Virus record (IMG/VR): IMGVR_UViG_3300021963_000021
Coordinates: 62,001-126,000 of that record
Length of the DNA stretch: 64,000 bases
Strand: one strand, 5' to 3'
The position numbers and the translations under genes were made by a program. Below, one piece after another: positions 42,794-47,994 of this stretch (its first letter is position 1; every line of letters starts with the position of its first letter). Below the pieces are notes generated by a model. It saw nothing but the letters and a program-made list of their open reading frames with translations. It did not search any database and was not told the origin of the DNA.

Positions 42794-44047
42794 TTATCCA
42801 GCAGCGCCTGGAGCAGAAACCTTCTTCAGCATGTTCATGACCTTAGTTGTTGTCTGAGGATCAGCTTTTATCAATGCTGTGAACGCAGTTGCCAATGCCT
42901 GCTGTTGTTTCATAGATAGATTGCCACCGGTCATAACAGCTTTAACAGAAGTCTGTAGTAGACTTGGATCAACACCTGGTAACAGTTGAGCCATTTGTCT
43001 AGCATTTAGAGAACCTTCAACATCGCCACTGCCACCATCAGCTCCGCCGAGGCTTCCTGTGTTACCGCCAGCTGCCTGTGAAAAGCCCTGAGCAAATTTG
43101 CCCATCATGCCTTGTTTTGGTTTGTCTTGATCTAGACCCGGAGTTGTGCCTGAAGCACCTGTGTTGATGTTCTGACCTGCGCCTAGCTTGTAACTATCTT
43201 GTACAGCACGTAACAGTGCTTGGTCAATGATAGAACTTGGTAATACTTTTACATCGCCTTCTTCATCTAGTTCCATGTTTTCTAGATCTAGATTTTCAAA
43301 TGCTTTACCAAACTTGGCTTTAGCTGCTTTAAACCCACCACCTGTGGTTGCGCCTACGCCCTGTTTGGCTTTGAGTTTAGCTTTAAGATCAGCTTGTGGA
43401 TTTGCCGGCGCAGCAGCAGCTGGCTCAGCAGCAGTAGCGGCAGTTGAACCGCCAACACCTGCCAGTGATTTGATCCTTGCCAATGGATCAGTTGTTGTGC
43501 TTGGTACACCTGTTGGCACTGGATTTCCACTAGGATCAGTAACGCTGACATTGGCTTTGGGCGCAAATCCAGCAGGAGTATCTGCGGCTCCGCCGCCCGC
43601 GGCAGGAGTTTCTCCACCTGGTGGTACTTCGATATTACCAGTAGGTTCGATTTTTTGTTGAGCATCGCCACCGGCAGCAGCTTTTTTCTGTGCCATCCTG
43701 TCGCGGAATGCTGAAATGTTTGAAGAACCTTTGCCTAGAACTCCTGTTGGAGCACCAGCGTCATGACCTGCTATAATCTTTTCTACGCCCTGTGTAGGAT
43801 ATCCACTTTGTTGTAAGAACATCATCAACGCTTCGGAATTAGGTTGTTGTCCTGTTTTACCTAGGTACCTATTAAACTCTTTTCTAAGAGCAATAGCATC
43901 GTTACCAGCATCTAATACACCAGTTGATTTACTGTGTCCTAGCTTAGACGCTATTTTGCGTCCAGCACGACCAAATACTCCCATACCTGCGGGTGCTTCG
44001 TCAAGTTGTTGTAATTCAGATTCTGTTATAACGTCGTGGATTTTCAT
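42794..44047 (-). CDS. Low-complexity Ala/Gly-rich putative internal head (ejected) protein
   Basis: N-terminus MKIHDVITESELQQLDEA with I/L-x-E sites; internal RIKSLAGV resembles the scaffold C-terminus; TAAATA at 44073-44078. Confidence 0.55.
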   Translation of the reverse strand: MKIHDVITESELQQLDEAPAGMGVFGRAGRKIASKLGHSKSTGVLDAGNDAIALRKEFNRYLGKTGQQPNSEALMMFLQQSGYPTQGVEKIIAGHDAGAPTGVLGKGSSNISAFRDRMAQKKAAAGGDAQQKIEPTGNIEVPPGGETPAAGGGAADTPAGFAPKANVSVTDPSGNPVPTGVPSTTTDPLARIKSLAGVGGSTAATAAEPAAAAPANPQADLKAKLKAKQGVGATTGGGFKAAKAKFGKAFENLDLENMELDEEGDVKVLPSSIIDQALLRAVQDSYKLGAGQNINTGASGTTPGLDQDKPKQGMMGKFAQGFSQAAGGNTGSLGGADGGSGDVEGSLNARQMAQLLPGVDPSLLQTSVKAVMTGGNLSMKQQQALATAFTALIKADPQTTTKVMNMLKKVSAPGAAG

Positions 44048-44087
44048 TTGTCAATTCCTAAAAGCGATATCTTATTTATTCTTATAA

Positions 44088-44543
44088 GAGCGAGACAAGC
44101 TCGCTCGTGTTTTTCGCTTTCGCTCAAACACTTTTTTATTTCTTAATATTATTTAATCTTAGATGCGAAGCATTAAGTATTATCTAGATTGTTCAGTCAC
44201 ACTTAGCCCGTTGCCGGGCTAAAAAAACTGAGCATTATCTGAGTTGCACAGTCACACAGCAGTAGAGCATTACAGAGGCGGTTGTCCGGTACCTCGAGCT
44301 CCGTCTTATCACAACGGCGGTATACGCAAATCTGCTATCACTAGCGTATACGTAGGGTTTTTCTCCCTTCTTTTTGCCTATATTAACTCCGTTCAAACAG
44401 CAAAACCGCAGGCGAATTTGCGATCGTGGTCCTGTTAAGGATACTTGCTGAGCACTTTTAGCGGCGAAAAGATTTCCGTCCCTCTTGTTATCGAGTTGTC
44501 ACTGGGCGCACGATGTTAGCCTGCGCTAGCTAAAAATCCGCTT
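44088..44543 (-). ncRNA. Candidate large structured non-coding RNA (~460 nt) immediately 3' of the GIY-YIG gene
   Basis: Longest non-coding gap in the window; about ten hairpins; GNRA loops (GCAA, GAAA) on the minus strand; duplicated 24-nt module. Confidence 0.6.
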
Positions 44544-44978
44544 TTATTTTGCCTTTTTATGTTCTTCTAGACGCTGTCTAAGTATGTTTGAGCCGCCAAC
44601 TCTGACGTTTATAATGCCATTATAATAGTCATCTGTTTCTAAAACTCTGCGCTCGAACTGCTCTCTAGCTTCAAGATAGCTCATTTCTGCCTTGGATTTA
44701 CAAAGATAAAGTATTTCTCTAGTGAAGTTTTCCGGACCTAATGCTTGGACGTCTGCGTTTAACCTATCAGATGAGCCGAAATAGTCGCGCCAATCGCTTT
44801 CTACTACAGATCTTCTTTTAAGTTTTTTGCCTTTGAGTGGAGGTTTAGTACGTTTGAATTGTGCTAGTTTCTTGCCTATGTACTTTTGCCCGGATTTAAG
44901 ATTCGTGATGAGATAAACAAAGCCAATGTAGCCTTCGGGTATTTCTTCTACGGGTTGATTTTGATATGTCCAAAGCAC
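44544..44978 (-). CDS. Stand-alone GIY-YIG (Seg-like) nuclease, catalytic domain only
   Basis: GFVYLITN...KYIGKK, YFGSS, FTREIL, conserved E (YLEAREQ) and YYN; 144 aa; GTG start 5 nt after TAACTA. Confidence 0.85.
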   Translation of the reverse strand: MLWTYQNQPVEEIPEGYIGFVYLITNLKSGQKYIGKKLAQFKRTKPPLKGKKLKRRSVVESDWRDYFGSSDRLNADVQALGPENFTREILYLCKSKAEMSYLEAREQFERRVLETDDYYNGIINVRVGGSNILRQRLEEHKKAK

Positions 44979-45209
44979 TCACTTAGTTATTTTTGGTGGT
45001 CTGCCTAGTTTGCCTTTTCTGGCTGCTTTACGTTCTTGCCTTTTGTTTTGTATCTCTACTCGCCTTGTGCTTGCCTCATTGCGTATTTCTGAAAGCCAAT
45101 ATCGTGCCTTAATAGCTGCTTCGTCTGAGCCTCTGTATTCAAAGCGTTCCTGCCACTTAAAGTATTCTTGGAACGCTTTGATCATTCGATCGTGTGTTTC
45201 TGTGGTCAT
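44979..45209 (-). CDS. Small basic protein, Hc1/histone-H1-like with AT-hook-like tail
   Basis: F...G...AA.KAR..L.EI......RR.EI pattern; C-terminal RKGKLGRPPK. Confidence 0.5.
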   Translation of the reverse strand: MTTETHDRMIKAFQEYFKWQERFEYRGSDEAAIKARYWLSEIRNEASTRRVEIQNKRQERKAARKGKLGRPPKITK

Positions 45210-46984
45210 CCTACGATATCAATGTCATTACTGTAACTAGTAAAGCCATTTTCCTTGATAACTTTAAGAACTTGATTTACACGGCTGGTCAAATCATCTC
45301 TATGTGAAATCAAGAACACATTCTTATCACGCTCACGTGTCATTTTCTTAAGAACCGCAATAGAACTTTCAACACCGCTGGCATCCATGCCTGAATCAAC
45401 AAGCTCGTCGATAAACAACAGATTAATACTTTGGTATAGATTCTCCCAAACATCGCGGAATGCCCAGCTCATGCTTAGGATCAATCTATTGCGCTCACCT
45501 CTTGACAGATTATCAAAGTCTAGATCTTGTCCTAGCTGTGTGATTATCACAGTTAGATCGTTTTGGAACTCTACAGTATGTGGCAATCCGATGCGATCTA
45601 GATAGTAGGTTAATCTAGTATTGAGATAATTTAAGTTTTGATCAATAATACGTTTACGAACAAAACTGTCTTTACTGGTTAACAGCTTATGAAGGAACTC
45701 TTGGTGATCCTTAACACGGGTTAACTCATTGATTCTACCCCAATCAAGTTCCTGTACTGCTGTGTTTTTAAGTTCTTCTATCTGATCTTCGTAGGGATCA
45801 GCTTCAGCTATCTTGTTTGCCAGTTCTTTTTCAAGACCGCTAAGAGTATTCTTGTGATTATAAGCATCATCGATGCTGTCATAATGTACAACTGGCTGAT
45901 CTCCTACTTCGCCTAATAGGTCTAGTGCTTCTTTAAACGCAGTAATTTCGTCTTGATGCTCAGTAATACTTTCAGCGCAGTCACTGACCTGCTTGTTTTT
46001 AACAGTCAGCATCTCTTCGTGCTTGGTATCGTGTATGTCTTGACCGCAGCTATGGCACTTGTGTTCGGCCAATAGTGCTAGTTCTTTGTTAAGCTTCTCA
46101 AAGTTCTTTTGATCTTTATCTAACACAGCATTGCTCTTAGCGATTAATGCTAGAATGTTGTCTACTTCTTTCTTTTTCTTAGTCCATTCACTGAGATCTT
46201 TTTGTTTTGCGATCTCACTGTCAATATCAATAGTGCTTAGAACACGTATATTTTTTTCTAACTGTAGAATAACATCGCCTTTGGTAGATTGCCACAGGCG
46301 CTGTTTACGTTCTAGACTTTCGATGCTCTGTTGTACTTTTTCGTTTGATATCTTTACAGTTTCTAATCTAGTAGTTTCTGTTTGGATAAGATCTTTAGAA
46401 ATACGAATAGAATCTTTTAGCAGTTCTGCTTTTTCGCTTAGGATAGTTATACCTAGTAGCTGTTCTATGATAGCACGTTGATCGTTGGCTTTCATAGACA
46501 AAAACGGTTCAGTATACGTGTTTAGTGCCACAAGATGTTTAAACATTTCGTGACTCATACCAAACAGACGTTCTATTTCTTTTTGCGTTTCTCTGCTATC
46601 GCCCTGACTTTCGTCCTGATCGTCAGTTTCCATAGTTTCGCCGTTGACAGCAAACTTCAATAGGTTGGGCTTGCGTCCACGTTCGATATGATATTCTACA
46701 CCGTCCTTTTCAAAGGTCACGGTACACAGCATGCCTTTGCCGTTGATCTTGTTAACAAGATTATCTTTTTTGATGTTAGTTAACGCTGTGCCGTAGATAG
46801 CATAGCTCAACCCGTTAATGATAGTAGTTTTACCTGTGCCATTACGAGCTCCGCTGTCATCTCCGCCTAGATCTAGGTTTTCGCCTAGCACTAACGTTAG
46901 TTGCCCCTTGTCAAAGTCTATGGCTTGGGTCTGATTGCCCACACTCATAAAGTTTTTAACTGTTAGATTTTTAATTTTTATCAT
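45206..46984 (-). CDS. gp46: Recombination endonuclease ATPase subunit (gp46/SbcC/Rad50)
   Basis: KNFMSVG, Walker A NGTGKTT, zinc hook CHSC, signature LSRGE, Walker B LLFIDE, ISH. Confidence 0.95.
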   Translation of the reverse strand: MIKIKNLTVKNFMSVGNQTQAIDFDKGQLTLVLGENLDLGGDDSGARNGTGKTTIINGLSYAIYGTALTNIKKDNLVNKINGKGMLCTVTFEKDGVEYHIERGRKPNLLKFAVNGETMETDDQDESQGDSRETQKEIERLFGMSHEMFKHLVALNTYTEPFLSMKANDQRAIIEQLLGITILSEKAELLKDSIRISKDLIQTETTRLETVKISNEKVQQSIESLERKQRLWQSTKGDVILQLEKNIRVLSTIDIDSEIAKQKDLSEWTKKKKEVDNILALIAKSNAVLDKDQKNFEKLNKELALLAEHKCHSCGQDIHDTKHEEMLTVKNKQVSDCAESITEHQDEITAFKEALDLLGEVGDQPVVHYDSIDDAYNHKNTLSGLEKELANKIAEADPYEDQIEELKNTAVQELDWGRINELTRVKDHQEFLHKLLTSKDSFVRKRIIDQNLNYLNTRLTYYLDRIGLPHTVEFQNDLTVIITQLGQDLDFDNLSRGERNRLILSMSWAFRDVWENLYQSINLLFIDELVDSGMDASGVESSIAVLKKMTRERDKNVFLISHRDDLTSRVNQVLKVIKENGFTSYSNDIDIVG

Positions 46985-47994
46985 AGATGATTATAGATCT
47001 CCAACAATAGATTCTTGTCGTAGGTTTCTGAGTCAATAGATGTGATTTGATTGACTACGATAGTGTCAACACTTTCAAATTTAATATCTATAGGCTGTGC
47101 TGTAGTTGCGTCAATCTCTGCTTTCTCTGGGATTAACATCAATTCTCGCAGATTATACTGCGGCATAAATGTTTCTTTGATGAAGTTTGCTTCTTCAAAT
47201 GTAATGGGCAGGTCGATCGTAACACGACAATGCATCTTTTCACGTAACAATTGATCCGGCTTGTCGATGATTTGACTGAGTCTATAGGTTCTATAAACAG
47301 GCTGACCTGGCCATGTCTTGTATTCTGGAGTACCGCCCCATTCTAAAATCATCATACCTCGATCATCATCGCTGGCATCTGCGTAGTTGTGCGGAAACGC
47401 ATTACCGATATAGGTAATGTTGCCTTTGGTTTGGCGCTTATGGAAATGACCGCTGAACACATACTCTTGATTTACAAAGTGTTCTGATTGTAATTGTCCA
47501 TGATCGGGCATCTGTACCATTGCGTTCATATAGAACAACGGTAGTTCTAAGTGTGCGAACACATAGCGACTTTTAATCTTAGGTACAGTTTTCCACTCAT
47601 CACCTACTAGCCAAGGCATGATAGTAACATCGCCTTCTGTAAGCGTTTCTTTGATAGGAACCACGTTTGGAAACAGGCGCATAAACTCGACAGAGTTGAT
47701 TTCACGTTTGTCTTTATAGAACAAATCGTGATTGCCTAGTATAAAATATACTTTTTCAAAGCTCTGACTTAACCGTTCTAGATTTGAAACAGTATAGTTC
47801 ATAGTACTAACATCGGTGGTCGCACGATTATGATGCCAATCTCCTAGGAAAATGGCAGTTTCGCAACCTTCTGCTTTGGCTGTGTCACAGAACCAATTTA
47901 CAAAATCTTCACAGTCCTGATTGTGTGTTCGGCTTCCTGACTTAAGACCAAAGTGTATATCTGTAAAACACGCAACTTTTTTGAATAACGGCAT
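46981..47994 (-). CDS. gp47: Recombination endonuclease nuclease subunit (gp47/SbcD/Mre11)
   Basis: DIHFG, GDWHH, GNHD and SGHFH metallophosphoesterase motifs. Confidence 0.95.
   Translation of the reverse strand: MPLFKKVACFTDIHFGLKSGSRTHNQDCEDFVNWFCDTAKAEGCETAIFLGDWHHNRATTDVSTMNYTVSNLERLSQSFEKVYFILGNHDLFYKDKREINSVEFMRLFPNVVPIKETLTEGDVTIMPWLVGDEWKTVPKIKSRYVFAHLELPLFYMNAMVQMPDHGQLQSEHFVNQEYVFSGHFHKRQTKGNITYIGNAFPHNYADASDDDRGMMILEWGGTPEYKTWPGQPVYRTYRLSQIIDKPDQLLREKMHCRVTIDLPITFEEANFIKETFMPQYNLRELMLIPEKAEIDATTAQPIDIKFESVDTIVVNQITSIDSETYDKNLLLEIYNHL

What the first reader, a model, noticed from the sequence alone, without database searches (positions are those of the whole stretch)
44175..44300. 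Repeated stem-loop modules with CAA loops inside the candidate RNA
Seen: two 24-nt direct repeats at 44179-44202 and 44234-44257 (19/24 identical). On the minus strand they read GUGU-GA-CUG-ugcaacu-CAG-AUA-AUGC and AAGUGU-GA-CU-gaacaaucu-AG-AUA-AUACUU. Both fold with the same GA/AUA internal loop and a CAA-containing apical loop, and they flank the GCAA hairpin. A third looser unit upstream (GAGC..CGG-ACAA-CCG..UAAUGCUC) shares the CAA loop and UAAUGCU end. Inference: iterated protein-binding or processing modules, like a miniature array.
Basis: partly seen in the sequence, partly recalled or inferred. Interest (0 to 1): 0.6.

Follow-up and report, generated by a model that had tools for sequence, protein, structure and literature searches.

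The report
Twin matched arms of a phage RNA
The two repeats are real, conserved twin arms of a roughly 460-base folded RNA (its front third is the orphan Rfam motif Polynucleobacter-1) shared by T4-like freshwater phages and bacterial genomic islands, and evolution keeps an 8-base stretch identical in both arms, which suggests that both arms bind copies of one still unknown partner.

Summary
The repeat is real: 19/24 identical (21/27 extended), and no shuffle out of 300 reaches that. It lies in a 496-nt intergenic region whose 5' part is a strong Rfam match (RF01718, Polynucleobacter-1, 80.6 bits). Comparison with 119 viral contigs shows that the known 141-nt motif is only the front third of a ~460-nt RNA. 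This RNA has covarying helices and three pseudoknots and ends in a terminator-like hairpin.

The two repeats (M1, M2) flank a covarying hairpin in nearly all relatives, always in two copies. An 8-nt purine-rich "signature" is identical in both arms of each RNA but differs between lineages. One position switched at least 15 times, always in both arms. Fixed differences between the arms (CUC versus UCU) lie among the coupled positions, so gene conversion does not explain it.

The same RNA architecture occurs in betaproteobacterial islands flanked by repeats of a tRNA gene's 3' end. There a DUF6641 gene, often with a small tyrosine recombinase, replaces the phage GIY-YIG gene.

Best reading: the arms are twin docking sites for two copies of one partner. 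That partner is unidentified.

The parts
44085..44543 (-). Whole conserved RNA of about 460 nt. It runs from 1-3 nt after the GIY-YIG stop codon to the terminal hairpin.
   Evidence: Conservation profile and alignments of 52-79 relatives; helices found by the covariation scan.
44395..44531 (-). 5' domain, matching Rfam RF01718 (Polynucleobacter-1 RNA).
   Evidence: 80.6 bits against a gathering score of 37, full-length match 1-141.
44461..44541 (-). PK0: the 5'-terminal GCGG (44541-38) pairs with CCGC (44464-61) in a hairpin loop of the 5' domain. This extends the Rfam model toward the 5' end.
   Evidence: Helix of 4 pairs, 2 of them covarying. The ACGG/GCGG is conserved just after the stop codon.
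44354..44368 (-). H8 hairpin, AGGG/CCCU.
   Evidence: All 4 pairs covary.
44320..44351 (-). H9 hairpin (GUAUACG/CGUAUAC plus UAGU/AUUU). Its loop forms PK1.
   Evidence: 11 pairs, all with changes on both sides, 97.2% paired.
44256..44338 (-). PK1 pseudoknot: loop AUAGCAG (44338-32) pairs with CUGCUGU (44262-56), directly 5' of M1 and overlapping it.
   Evidence: 7 pairs, 6 compensatory, 99.8% paired. Variants include UUAGCG/CGCUAA, UUAGUG/CACUAA and ACAAUAG/UUAUUGU.
44264..44315 (-). It is H11 (44302-298 with 44268-264), H12 (44295-291 with 44279-275) and PK2 (GUUGU 44315-311 with ACAAC 44285-281), with invariant GGUAC and AACCGCC.
   Evidence: Helices 3-5 (90-100% paired, compensatory changes); invariant columns.
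44232..44257 (-). Module M1: small hairpin (C51-G39, U50-A40, G49-C41), loop ending in xAACUC, then the signature AGAUAAUG (44240-44233).
   Evidence: ACUC is invariant. In some relatives M1 is a clean GNRA hairpin with a C-G to G-C swap (CUGAG-GUAA-CUCGG versus GUGAG-GCAA-CUCGC). Coupling to M2 is shown.
44205..44220 (-). H13 hairpin between the modules. The loop is GCAA here but varies elsewhere.
   Evidence: Stem variants AGCCC/GGGCU, UGCCC/GGGCA, CGCCC/GGGCG, CUCCC/GGGAG and AACCC/GGGUU appear in the alignments. The column-wise count is only 72% paired because of alignment shifts.
44175..44204 (-). Module M2: outer stem AAGUGU/AUACUU, internal loop GA/AUA, inner stem CUG/UAG, loop AACAAUC, signature AGAUAAUA (44185-44178).
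   Evidence: Outer stem 92.5% paired; inner stem 90.8% paired with one covarying pair. AUCU is invariant. The fold recurs in RNAfold runs on relatives.
44164..44172 (-). H14 small hairpin, UGC-UUC-GCA.
   Evidence: G-C, U-A and A-U variants of the closing pair (helix 11).
44107..44131 (-). H15 hairpin with the conserved internal motif UGAGCGNNAGCGAA. It follows a variable AU-rich spacer.
   Evidence: The flanking stem covaries in alignment A1 (GUGUU/AACAC, UGCUU/AAGCA, UGCUC/GAGCA). The motif is also present in the bacterial copies.
44088..44106 (-). H16 terminal hairpin GAGCGAG/CUCGCUC, the likely 3' end and terminator.
   Evidence: 7-pair helix, 4 pairs covarying. Also scored as terminator-like on the + strand.
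44544..44978 (-). Upstream gene: a 144-aa SegE-type GIY-YIG protein consisting of the catalytic domain only.
   Evidence: PF19835, E 6.9e-37; phrog_447. The same family lies directly upstream in 103 of 119 loci.
42794..44047 (-). Downstream gene (417 aa, no family). It is preceded by AATAAATA at 44073-44080, which resembles a T4 late promoter.
   Evidence: Downstream ORFs fall into more than 10 unrelated clusters but share the N-terminus MK[IV]xE[IL]IxE.

Best explanation
Shown: the two repeats are the two homologous arms (M1, M2) of the 3' domain of a ~460-nt pseudoknotted RNA. The 5' third of this RNA is the Rfam motif Polynucleobacter-1. Each arm is a small hairpin whose loop ends in xAA plus a fixed pyrimidine triplet (CUC in M1, UCU in M2). 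An 8-nt purine-rich signature follows the triplet (AGAUAAUG in M1 and AGAUAAUA in M2 in this phage). The arms flank a covarying hairpin. Selection keeps the signature, and to a lesser degree x, the same in both arms while letting it differ between lineages. Inferred: the arms are a matched pair of docking sites for two copies of one partner. The partner is most likely a dimeric or twice-bound RNA-binding protein, or another element-specific factor, whose specificity drifts together with the signature. The nutL and nutR boxB hairpins of a lambdoid phage match each other in this way and differ between phages. The rest of the RNA (three pseudoknots, invariant GGUAC...AACCGCC) would hold the two arms in a fixed geometry. 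The partner and the biological role are not identified.
For: RF01718 scores 80.6 bits at 44395-44531. Conservation continues for about 330 nt beyond the model in 119 viral loci. Structure: 54 tested pairs are 90.3% paired against 34-45% for slid controls, and 0 of 500 shuffles reach the observed covariation score. PK1 is 99.8% paired with 6 of 7 pairs compensatory. Coupling: at 44240/44185 the states are A/A in 32 sequences and G/G in 40, never mixed. MI is 1.08 bits against 0.30 for the next best column, including columns that lie between the two modules. On a tree built from the flanks, this position changes 15 times in M1 and 15 times in M2, and the joint state also changes 15 times. Nine of 9 independent pairs go the same way (p = 0.004). 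Positions r2, x and x+1 are coupled likewise. In 66 of 77 distinct 3' domains the signatures are 7/7 identical, across 6 variants, while shuffles peak at 3/7. The invariant ACUC (M1) and AUCU (M2) lie between coupled positions, so a conversion tract cannot explain the pattern. Divergent phage types and bacterial copies keep the rule with quite different signatures (GAGAAA, AGUCAAG, AGCGAAAG, AUCAAAAG, GGAGAAAG, AGAGAAAG). The two copies within one genome differ from each other (G115: AGCGAAAG versus AGAGAAAG; G024: AGCGAAAG versus AACAAAAG/UCCAAAAG). This fits a role as a specificity determinant.
Against: No partner was found. No GIY-YIG column tracks the signature. The GIY-YIG family occurs without the RNA in cultured phages. 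The RNA occurs without the GIY-YIG gene in bacteria. No protein is shared by the phage and island contexts. The signatures change almost completely between lineages, which is easier to reconcile with base pairing than with protein recognition. Yet they stay purine- and A-rich, which argues against a free guide. Coupling is not perfect in bacteria (single mismatches in G107, G084, G024b, L142, L144). The modules are thermodynamically weak on their own (-0.9 to -5.5 kcal/mol). There is no expression data. Linkage of two sites 55 nt apart could inflate the count of independent events if whole segments recombine between phages.
Confidence: 0.5

Rival explanations
1. The role is purely architectural. 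M1 and M2 arose by internal duplication. Their purine-rich strands dock (A-minor or ribose-zipper type contacts, or direct arm-to-arm contact) into a pseudo-symmetric core of the same RNA, or of a second copy of the RNA in a homo-oligomer. No outside ligand is involved.
For: The RNA is the only component common to phages and islands. Signatures are always A/G-rich. The RNA is large and ornate, with three pseudoknots and invariant unpaired nucleotides. From established knowledge, this resembles GOLLD and ROOL, large RNAs also found in phages that assemble into RNA-only multimers.
Against: Docking into helices does not by itself require the two strands to be identical. No other column of the RNA covaries with the signature (next best MI 0.30; complementarity scan). 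Like-with-like contacts over 8 nt have no known precedent.
Confidence: 0.2
2. The two signatures are identical seed or guide segments. They base-pair with two copies of one nucleic-acid sequence (mRNA, sRNA or DNA). For example, they might bring together two sites with the same core for the element's recombinase or nuclease, or silence a target as P4 CI RNA does with seqA/seqC.
For: Signatures turn over almost completely between lineages while staying matched, as guides do. They are about 8 nt long and lie at the 3' edge of a small hairpin. In bacteria the RNA is followed in about 10 of 17 loci by a 188-aa tyrosine recombinase that has only the catalytic domain, and it lies inside islands flanked by repeats of a tRNA gene's 3' end. 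In phages it follows a GIY-YIG nuclease that lacks a DNA-binding domain.
Against: No complement of the signature lies at any consistent place within +/-20 kb in eight bacterial regions, within 8-kb loci, or in the 364-kb phage genome. The best hit there is 13/14, about what chance gives. The att repeat (the tRNA gene's 3' end) does not match the signature. Composition is constrained (A-rich), unlike free guides. The recombinase is missing from about 40% of bacterial loci and from all phage loci.
Confidence: 0.15
3. The modules are processing sites. The same endoribonuclease cuts at the same place in both modules and releases a fragment of about 55 nt that contains hairpin H13.
For: Two identical A-rich sites at a fixed spacing (55 nt in phage, 57-61 nt in bacteria). 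From established knowledge, this resembles ToxI-type repeats, which their toxin cuts at A-rich sites.
Against: There is no tandem array. No ToxN-like or other known defence protein is nearby. No read data could be obtained. A conserved host RNase would not need lineage-specific signatures.
Confidence: 0.1
4. The repeats act at the DNA level, as iterons, operator half-sites or promoter elements. The RNA-like conservation would then be incidental.
For: Direct repeats spaced about five helical turns apart; GATAAT resembles a -10 hexamer.
Against: The flanking and enclosing helices show strand-specific compensatory changes and G-U pairs. Variants such as GCATAAT, GATGAA and AGCGAAAG are not promoter-like. 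The promoter scan finds nothing here.
Confidence: 0.03

Closest known systems
Polynucleobacter-1 RNA motif (Rfam RF01718; Weinberg et al. 2010, PMC2864571)
   Same: The 5' 137 nt of this RNA match the model end to end at 80.6 bits. As that paper noted, the motif lies downstream of a small phage-type gene with cyanophage homologues. It occurs in Polynucleobacter genomes and freshwater sequence.
   Different: The published model is 141 nt, has no assigned function, and had not been seen in any phage. Here the RNA continues for a further ~330 nt, with pseudoknots PK0, PK1 and PK2, the twin modules, H13-H16 and a terminator. It is common in T4-like viral contigs (at least 119 loci). No Rfam family covers the 3' domain.
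nutL/nutR boxB hairpins of lambdoid phages (N antitermination), recalled from established knowledge
   Same: These are two small RNA hairpins within one genome that match each other, differ between related phages, and are read by the same protein.
   Different: Here the two hairpins lie 55 nt apart inside one large structured RNA. No N-like protein or boxA was identified. This is an analogy only.
Type III toxin-antitoxin RNAs (ToxI-like repeats)
   Same: Repeated RNA units share an A-rich site and are kept alike because one protein reads all of them. Phages are known to carry mimics of them.
   Different: There is no head-to-tail array. Only about 24 nt of each arm is repeated. No ToxN/AbiQ-like gene is present.
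IS110 bridge RNA / seekRNA
   Same: A structured RNA next to a recombinase, with two similarly built loops that carry specificity segments.
   Different: No DEDD (IS110) recombinase is present. The neighbouring enzyme is a tyrosine recombinase, in only some bacterial loci, and a GIY-YIG nuclease in phages. The two segments are identical rather than target- and donor-specific. No complementary DNA was found.
Large ornate RNAs of phages and prophages (GOLLD, ROOL)
   Same: Several hundred nucleotides long, multi-pseudoknotted, found both in bacteria and their phages, function unknown.
   Different: No match to those Rfam models. Smaller (~460 nt). Different hosts (Betaproteobacteria and their T4-like phages).

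Membership tests
Rfam RF01718 Polynucleobacter-1 RNA | Covariance-model score above the curated gathering score (37 bits) over the full model. | tested here: met
   80.6 bits, model positions 1-141, E 1.7e-15.
Rfam RF01718 Polynucleobacter-1 RNA | The model's helices are supported by compensatory changes among relatives. | tested here: met
   GCGCA/UGCGC (4 covarying pairs), UUUU/AAAG (4), CAGCAA/UUGCUG (4) and GAUCGC/GCGGUU (3).
Rfam RF01718 Polynucleobacter-1 RNA | Genomic context reported by its authors: downstream of a GOS11034 / PSSM2_218-like gene. | tested here: inconclusive
   The upstream gene is the same ~142-aa family in 103 of 119 loci and has cyanophage homologues. Identity with GOS11034 or PSSM2_218 was not checked directly.
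CRISPR-like mini-array / solitary repeat units | Near-identical repeats separated by variable spacers, with copy number varying between relatives. | tested here: not met
   There are always two copies. The intervening segment is a conserved covarying hairpin. The repeats are 19/24 identical, with fixed differences.
Type III TA antitoxin RNA (ToxI-like) | Head-to-tail tandem repeats next to a ToxN/AbiQ-type endoribonuclease gene. | tested here: not met
   TRF finds no array in 43900-44700. Neighbouring proteins have no such Pfam or PADLOC family.
Kink-turn motif (for the GA/AUA internal loop) | A 3-nt bulge followed by tandem sheared G.A/A.G pairs on both strands. | tested here: not met
   Sequence inspection: the strand opposite GA reads AUA-AU, so the second G.A pair is missing. 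No structural test is possible with these tools.
IS110 bridge RNA | An adjacent DEDD/IS110 recombinase, and loop guides complementary to target and donor DNA. | tested here: not met
   No such protein is present. No covarying complement was found.
tRNA / tmRNA-like element | Detected by ARAGORN or the Rfam tRNA/tmRNA models. | tested here: not met
   ARAGORN finds none in the window. No Rfam tRNA or tmRNA hit in the region.

The most novel reading that the evidence does not exclude
The twin signatures are programmable specificity segments of an RNA that guides or licenses an element-encoded DNA enzyme. That enzyme would be the catalytic-domain-only tyrosine recombinase in the bacterial islands and the DNA-binding-domain-less GIY-YIG nuclease in the phages. 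The RNA would recognise two sites that share one core sequence. If so, this would be a new class of RNA-directed recombination or cleavage, unrelated to CRISPR, TnpB/IscB or IS110.
Probability: 0.07. Interest if true: 0.95.

Novelty: new variant of a known kind. Interest (0 to 1): 0.62.

Why it matters
Polynucleobacter-1 has been an orphan Rfam motif since 2010. It was recorded as 141 nt long, had no known function, and had not been seen in a phage. This locus changes that picture in three ways.

- The motif is the front part of a much larger, multi-pseudoknotted RNA.
- The RNA is common in T4-like freshwater phages.
- A diverged form of it sits in mobile islands of betaproteobacteria, presumably the hosts of such phages.

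The twin arms show an unusual kind of covariation, identity rather than complementarity, across many independent switches. That gives a concrete experimental handle. Changing one arm, the other, or both should break and then restore whatever the RNA binds. The signature also predicts which RNA variants are cross-compatible. If the partner proves to be element-encoded, the locus could be a specificity system, such as immunity, decoy or guide, exchanged between phages and islands.

Tried and rejected
- **Cultured phages by DNA similarity.** BLASTN of the region against 50,697 phage records gave no match.
- **Relatives through the downstream protein.** This gave one weak locus only.
- **Other Rfam families for the 3' domain.** None, even at E <= 10.
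- **tRNA or tmRNA.** None.
- **Read evidence for expression or processing.** I did not try it by other means.
- **A cis partner for the signature.** The MI scan found none (best other column 0.30 bits). The scan comparing cognate with non-cognate complementarity also found none.
- **A trans partner in the 364-kb genome.** Only near-chance hits.
- **A trans partner around the bacterial copies.** None within 8 kb or 40 kb.
- **Loop-loop kissing between M1 and M2.** Complementary in some sequences (GUUC/GAAC) but not in others, judged by eye. Rejected.
- **Gene conversion as the cause of the coupling.** Rejected, because invariant differences (CUC versus UCU) lie between coupled positions.
- **Co-evolution with the GIY-YIG protein.** No signal.
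- **orf76 against DUF6641.** Unrelated.
- **PDB sequence search for the GIY-YIG protein.** No hit.
- **DUF6641 fold.** The AF2 model is weak (pLDDT 66) and Foldseek gave no significant match.
- **Homology of the phage-type and bacterial-type 3' domains.** This could not be shown with an HMM or with covariance model R1. It rests on an ordered set of short motifs, found in 13 of 15 bacterial loci, once in the phage genome, and 0 times in 0.8 Mb of control sequence.
- **Known defence systems (PADLOC).** No hit apart from a generic homing-endonuclease label.

Full report
**Setting.** The window is bases 62001-126000 of a 364-kb IMG/VR virus record. It carries T4-type genes: gp46/gp47-like recombination nuclease subunits at 45206-47994(-), a T4 baseplate protein and an M23 peptidase. 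The finding lies in a 496-nt gap (44048-44543) on the minus strand. The gap is bounded by a 144-aa SegE-type GIY-YIG ORF (44544-44978; PF19835, E 7e-37; phrog_447) and a 417-aa ORF with no family (42794-44047).

**The observation.** The repeat finder extends them to 27 nt at 78% identity, spaced 55 nt apart. None of 300 shuffles of the intergenic sequence gives a 24-nt repeat with 19 matches. TRF finds no tandem array.

**What the region is.** Rfam places Polynucleobacter-1 RNA (RF01718) at 44395-44531(-) with 80.6 bits against a threshold of 37. That is immediately 5' of the finding. Its authors described a 141-nt motif of unknown function, lying downstream of a gene with a cyanophage homologue and not seen in any purified phage (PMC2864571).

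In most of them GATAAT occurs twice and GTGTGA once or twice, at the same offsets as in the window. Alignments show conservation from 1-3 nt after the GIY-YIG stop codon through to a covarying terminal hairpin. In window coordinates this is about 44543 to 44085, roughly 460 nt. The known motif is therefore only the front third of the RNA.

**Structure.** A covariation scan and the pair-counting tool (alignment A2, 58 sequences) support the following elements.
- A 5' pseudoknot: GCGG 44541-38 with CCGC 44464-61.
- The helices of the Rfam model.
- H8 (44368-54).
- H9 (44351-20): 11 pairs, all with double-sided changes.
- PK1: loop 44338-32 with 44262-56, 99.8% paired, 6 of 7 pairs compensatory.
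- PK2: 44315-11 with 44285-81, 96.9% paired.
- H11 and H12.
- The hairpin H13 between the repeats.
- H14, H15 (with a conserved UGAGCGNNAGCGAA motif) and the terminal hairpin H16.

Overall 90.3% of cells are paired, against 34-45% when partners are slid by 1-3 columns. None of 500 shuffles reaches the observed covariation score.

M1's closing stem uses nucleotides that belong to PK1. The 'third unit' is H11/H12 plus PK2, not a CGG-ACAA-CCG hairpin. M2's drawn fold is compatible with the data: the outer stem is 92.5% paired and the inner stem 90.8%, with one pair showing U-A 24, C-G 16 and U-G 13. M1 is heterogeneous. In some phages it is a clean GNRA hairpin with a C-G to G-C swap. In others the strand AUAAUGU pairs with an inserted ACAUU.

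**The unusual feature.** The 3' strands of the two modules change in parallel, not in a complementary way. Examples are CAGAUAAU/UAGAUAAU, CGGAUAAU/UGGAUAAU, CGCAUAAU/UGCAUAAU, CGGAUGAU/UGGAUGAU and CAGAUGAA/UAGAUGAA. The loop triplet changes from CAA to CGA in both modules.
- At 44240/44185 the states are A/A in 32 sequences and G/G in 40, never mixed. MI is 1.08 bits, the full entropy. The best other column gives 0.30 bits, including columns that lie between the two sites.
- On a tree built from flanking DNA with the modules excluded (71 rows), this position needs 15 changes in M1 and 15 in M2, and the joint state also needs only 15. Nine of 9 independent pairs on supported branches go the same way (p = 0.004).
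- A second position (44236/44181) behaves alike: 7 and 8 changes, and 5 of 5 pairs go the same way.
- In 66 of 77 distinct 3' domains the 7-nt signatures are identical, in 6 variants. Shuffles peak at 3/7.
- The remaining 11 are divergent architectures that my pattern misses. Ten of them are recognised by covariance model R1, built from A2 (E from 1e-27 to 3e-4). By eye they keep the rule with other signatures: AGGAUAAU, GAGAAA, AGUCAAG.
- ACUC in M1 and AUCU in M2 are invariant and lie between coupled positions. Gene conversion is therefore not the cause. Simple linkage is unlikely, because intervening variable columns are not coupled.

**Gene context in phages.** The locus is syntenic: gp47, gp46, an optional small ORF, the GIY-YIG gene, the RNA, then a variable gene followed by an M23 peptidase. 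The GIY-YIG family lies directly upstream in 103 of 119 loci, at 47-94% identity. The same family is also a common gene of cyanomyoviruses, the OM43 phage Melnitz (64% identity), rhizobiophages and others. In the cultured relatives I inspected, the downstream gap is too small for this RNA. No GIY-YIG column tracks the signature. The RNA is thus specific to an uncultured freshwater clade, and the GIY-YIG protein is not an obligate partner.

**Bacterial copies.** The same 5' pattern in GTDB genomes gave mostly chance hits. It also gave true RF01718 matches (80-104 bits) in Polynucleobacter and other betaproteobacterial assemblies. In Polynucleobacter the motif is sporadic: 13 of 121 species genomes, four of them with two matches over the cut-off.

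These copies also have a long 3' extension with the same order of landmarks...AACCGCC..., GAACUC plus signature, a hairpin, GAAUCU plus signature, UGAGC..AGCGAA, and a terminator hairpin. Here too the signature is matched between the two modules and differs between genomes: AGCGAAAG, AUCAAAAG, AGAGAAAG, GGAGAAAG, AGCAAAAG. There are a few single mismatches.

Homology of the 3' domains could not be shown with the phage-derived HMM or covariance model. It rests on the ordered motif set, present in 13 of 15 bacterial loci, once in the 364-kb phage genome, and never in 0.8 Mb of control sequence.

The bacterial neighbours differ from the phage ones.
- A divergently transcribed DUF6641 gene is present in every locus examined.
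- A 188-aa tyrosine recombinase with only the catalytic domain lies downstream in about 10 of 17 loci.
- An AAA ATPase follows in some loci.
- The unit lies inside islands flanked by 43-49-nt direct repeats. By sequence inspection these repeats look like the 3' end of a tRNA-Phe(GAA) gene; they were not run through a tRNA detector.

DUF6641 has a basic N-terminus. Its predicted fold is of low confidence and matches nothing. No PADLOC defence family is present.

**Search for a partner.** No column of the RNA covaries with the signature, and no segment shows cognate-specific complementarity. The phage genome has no further module copies and no significant complement. The bacterial regions show no complement at any consistent place within +/-20 kb.

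**Interpretation.** It is shown that the repeats are two homologous arms of a large conserved RNA, and that selection keeps an 8-nt strand the same in both. It is inferred that both arms are read by copies of one partner whose specificity differs between lineages.

I rate a protein or other element-specific factor binding twice as the most likely reading (0.5). The rivals are intramolecular or homo-oligomeric docking (0.2), identical guide or seed segments for a nucleic-acid target (0.15), twin processing sites (0.1) and DNA-level repeats (0.03).

The 'array of three' picture, the M1 stem and the link to the GIY-YIG protein are not supported.

**Novelty.** The family's 5' part is known (RF01718). 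In Rfam 15 and the papers held here I found no description of the ~330-nt 3' domain, the pseudoknots, the twin identity-coupled arms, the abundance in T4-like viral contigs, or the island context with DUF6641 and a small recombinase.

Noticed in passing
window 42794-44047(-) and the ORFs just downstream of the RNA in L003-L121: The genes downstream of the RNA fall into more than 10 unrelated clusters. Most nevertheless start with MK[IV]xE[IL]IxE. From memory this resembles the capsid-targeting sequence of T4 internal head proteins, so this may be a hypervariable internal-protein slot. Each gene is preceded by a T4-late-promoter-like TATAAATA (AATAAATA at 44073-44080 in the window).
   Followed up: partly
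L189, L198, L249-L261; G041 island = L268:18530 to L269:9130: Bacterial copies of the RNA always sit next to a divergent DUF6641 gene and often upstream of a 188-aa tyrosine recombinase with only the catalytic domain. They lie inside islands flanked by 43-49-nt repeats that look like the 3' end of a tRNA-Phe gene. Several partial repeats suggest tandem islands.
   Followed up: partly
window 44541-44546: The RNA's first pseudoknot strand (GCGG 44541-38) starts 2-3 nt after the GIY-YIG stop codon (UAA 44546-44544). A terminating ribosome would therefore cover it, and RNA folding may be coupled to translation of the upstream gene.
   Followed up: no
window 44544-44978(-): The protein family (phrog_447) is widely labelled 'NAD synthetase' in phage records, yet it is a clear GIY-YIG domain (PF19835). 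It consists of the catalytic domain only (144 aa) and occupies a conserved position. This is unlike a mobile homing endonuclease.
   Followed up: partly
window 44979-45209(-): The 76-aa ORF ends in an Arg/Lys-rich tail, KGKLGRPPKITK, which looks like an AT-hook. Homologues are detectable in 45 of the loci. It is unrelated to DUF6641.
   Followed up: partly
L059:11345-11451: A natural deletion variant of the RNA. It lacks the stretch from H10 through M1 and H13 and keeps only M2.
   Followed up: no
window 44088-44106: On the + strand the terminal hairpin H16 is followed by GTGTTTTT, and it was scored as a + strand terminator. It may stop transcription in both directions.
   Followed up: no
G115:C1:401229-401366 and 419563-419698; G024:C1 (two sites): Where two copies of the RNA share one bacterial genome, their signatures differ: AGCGAAAG versus AGAGAAAG in G115, and AGCGAAAG versus AACAAAAG/UCCAAAAG in G024. 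This fits a specificity determinant, but only two cases are available.
   Followed up: partly
L257 (G122:C80:8550-8685): A Polynucleobacter-labelled assembly holds a phage-type copy of the RNA (signature GCAUAAU, 182 bits with model R1) on a ~9-kb contig. It is probably phage DNA in the assembly, and it hints at the host of these phages.
   Followed up: no
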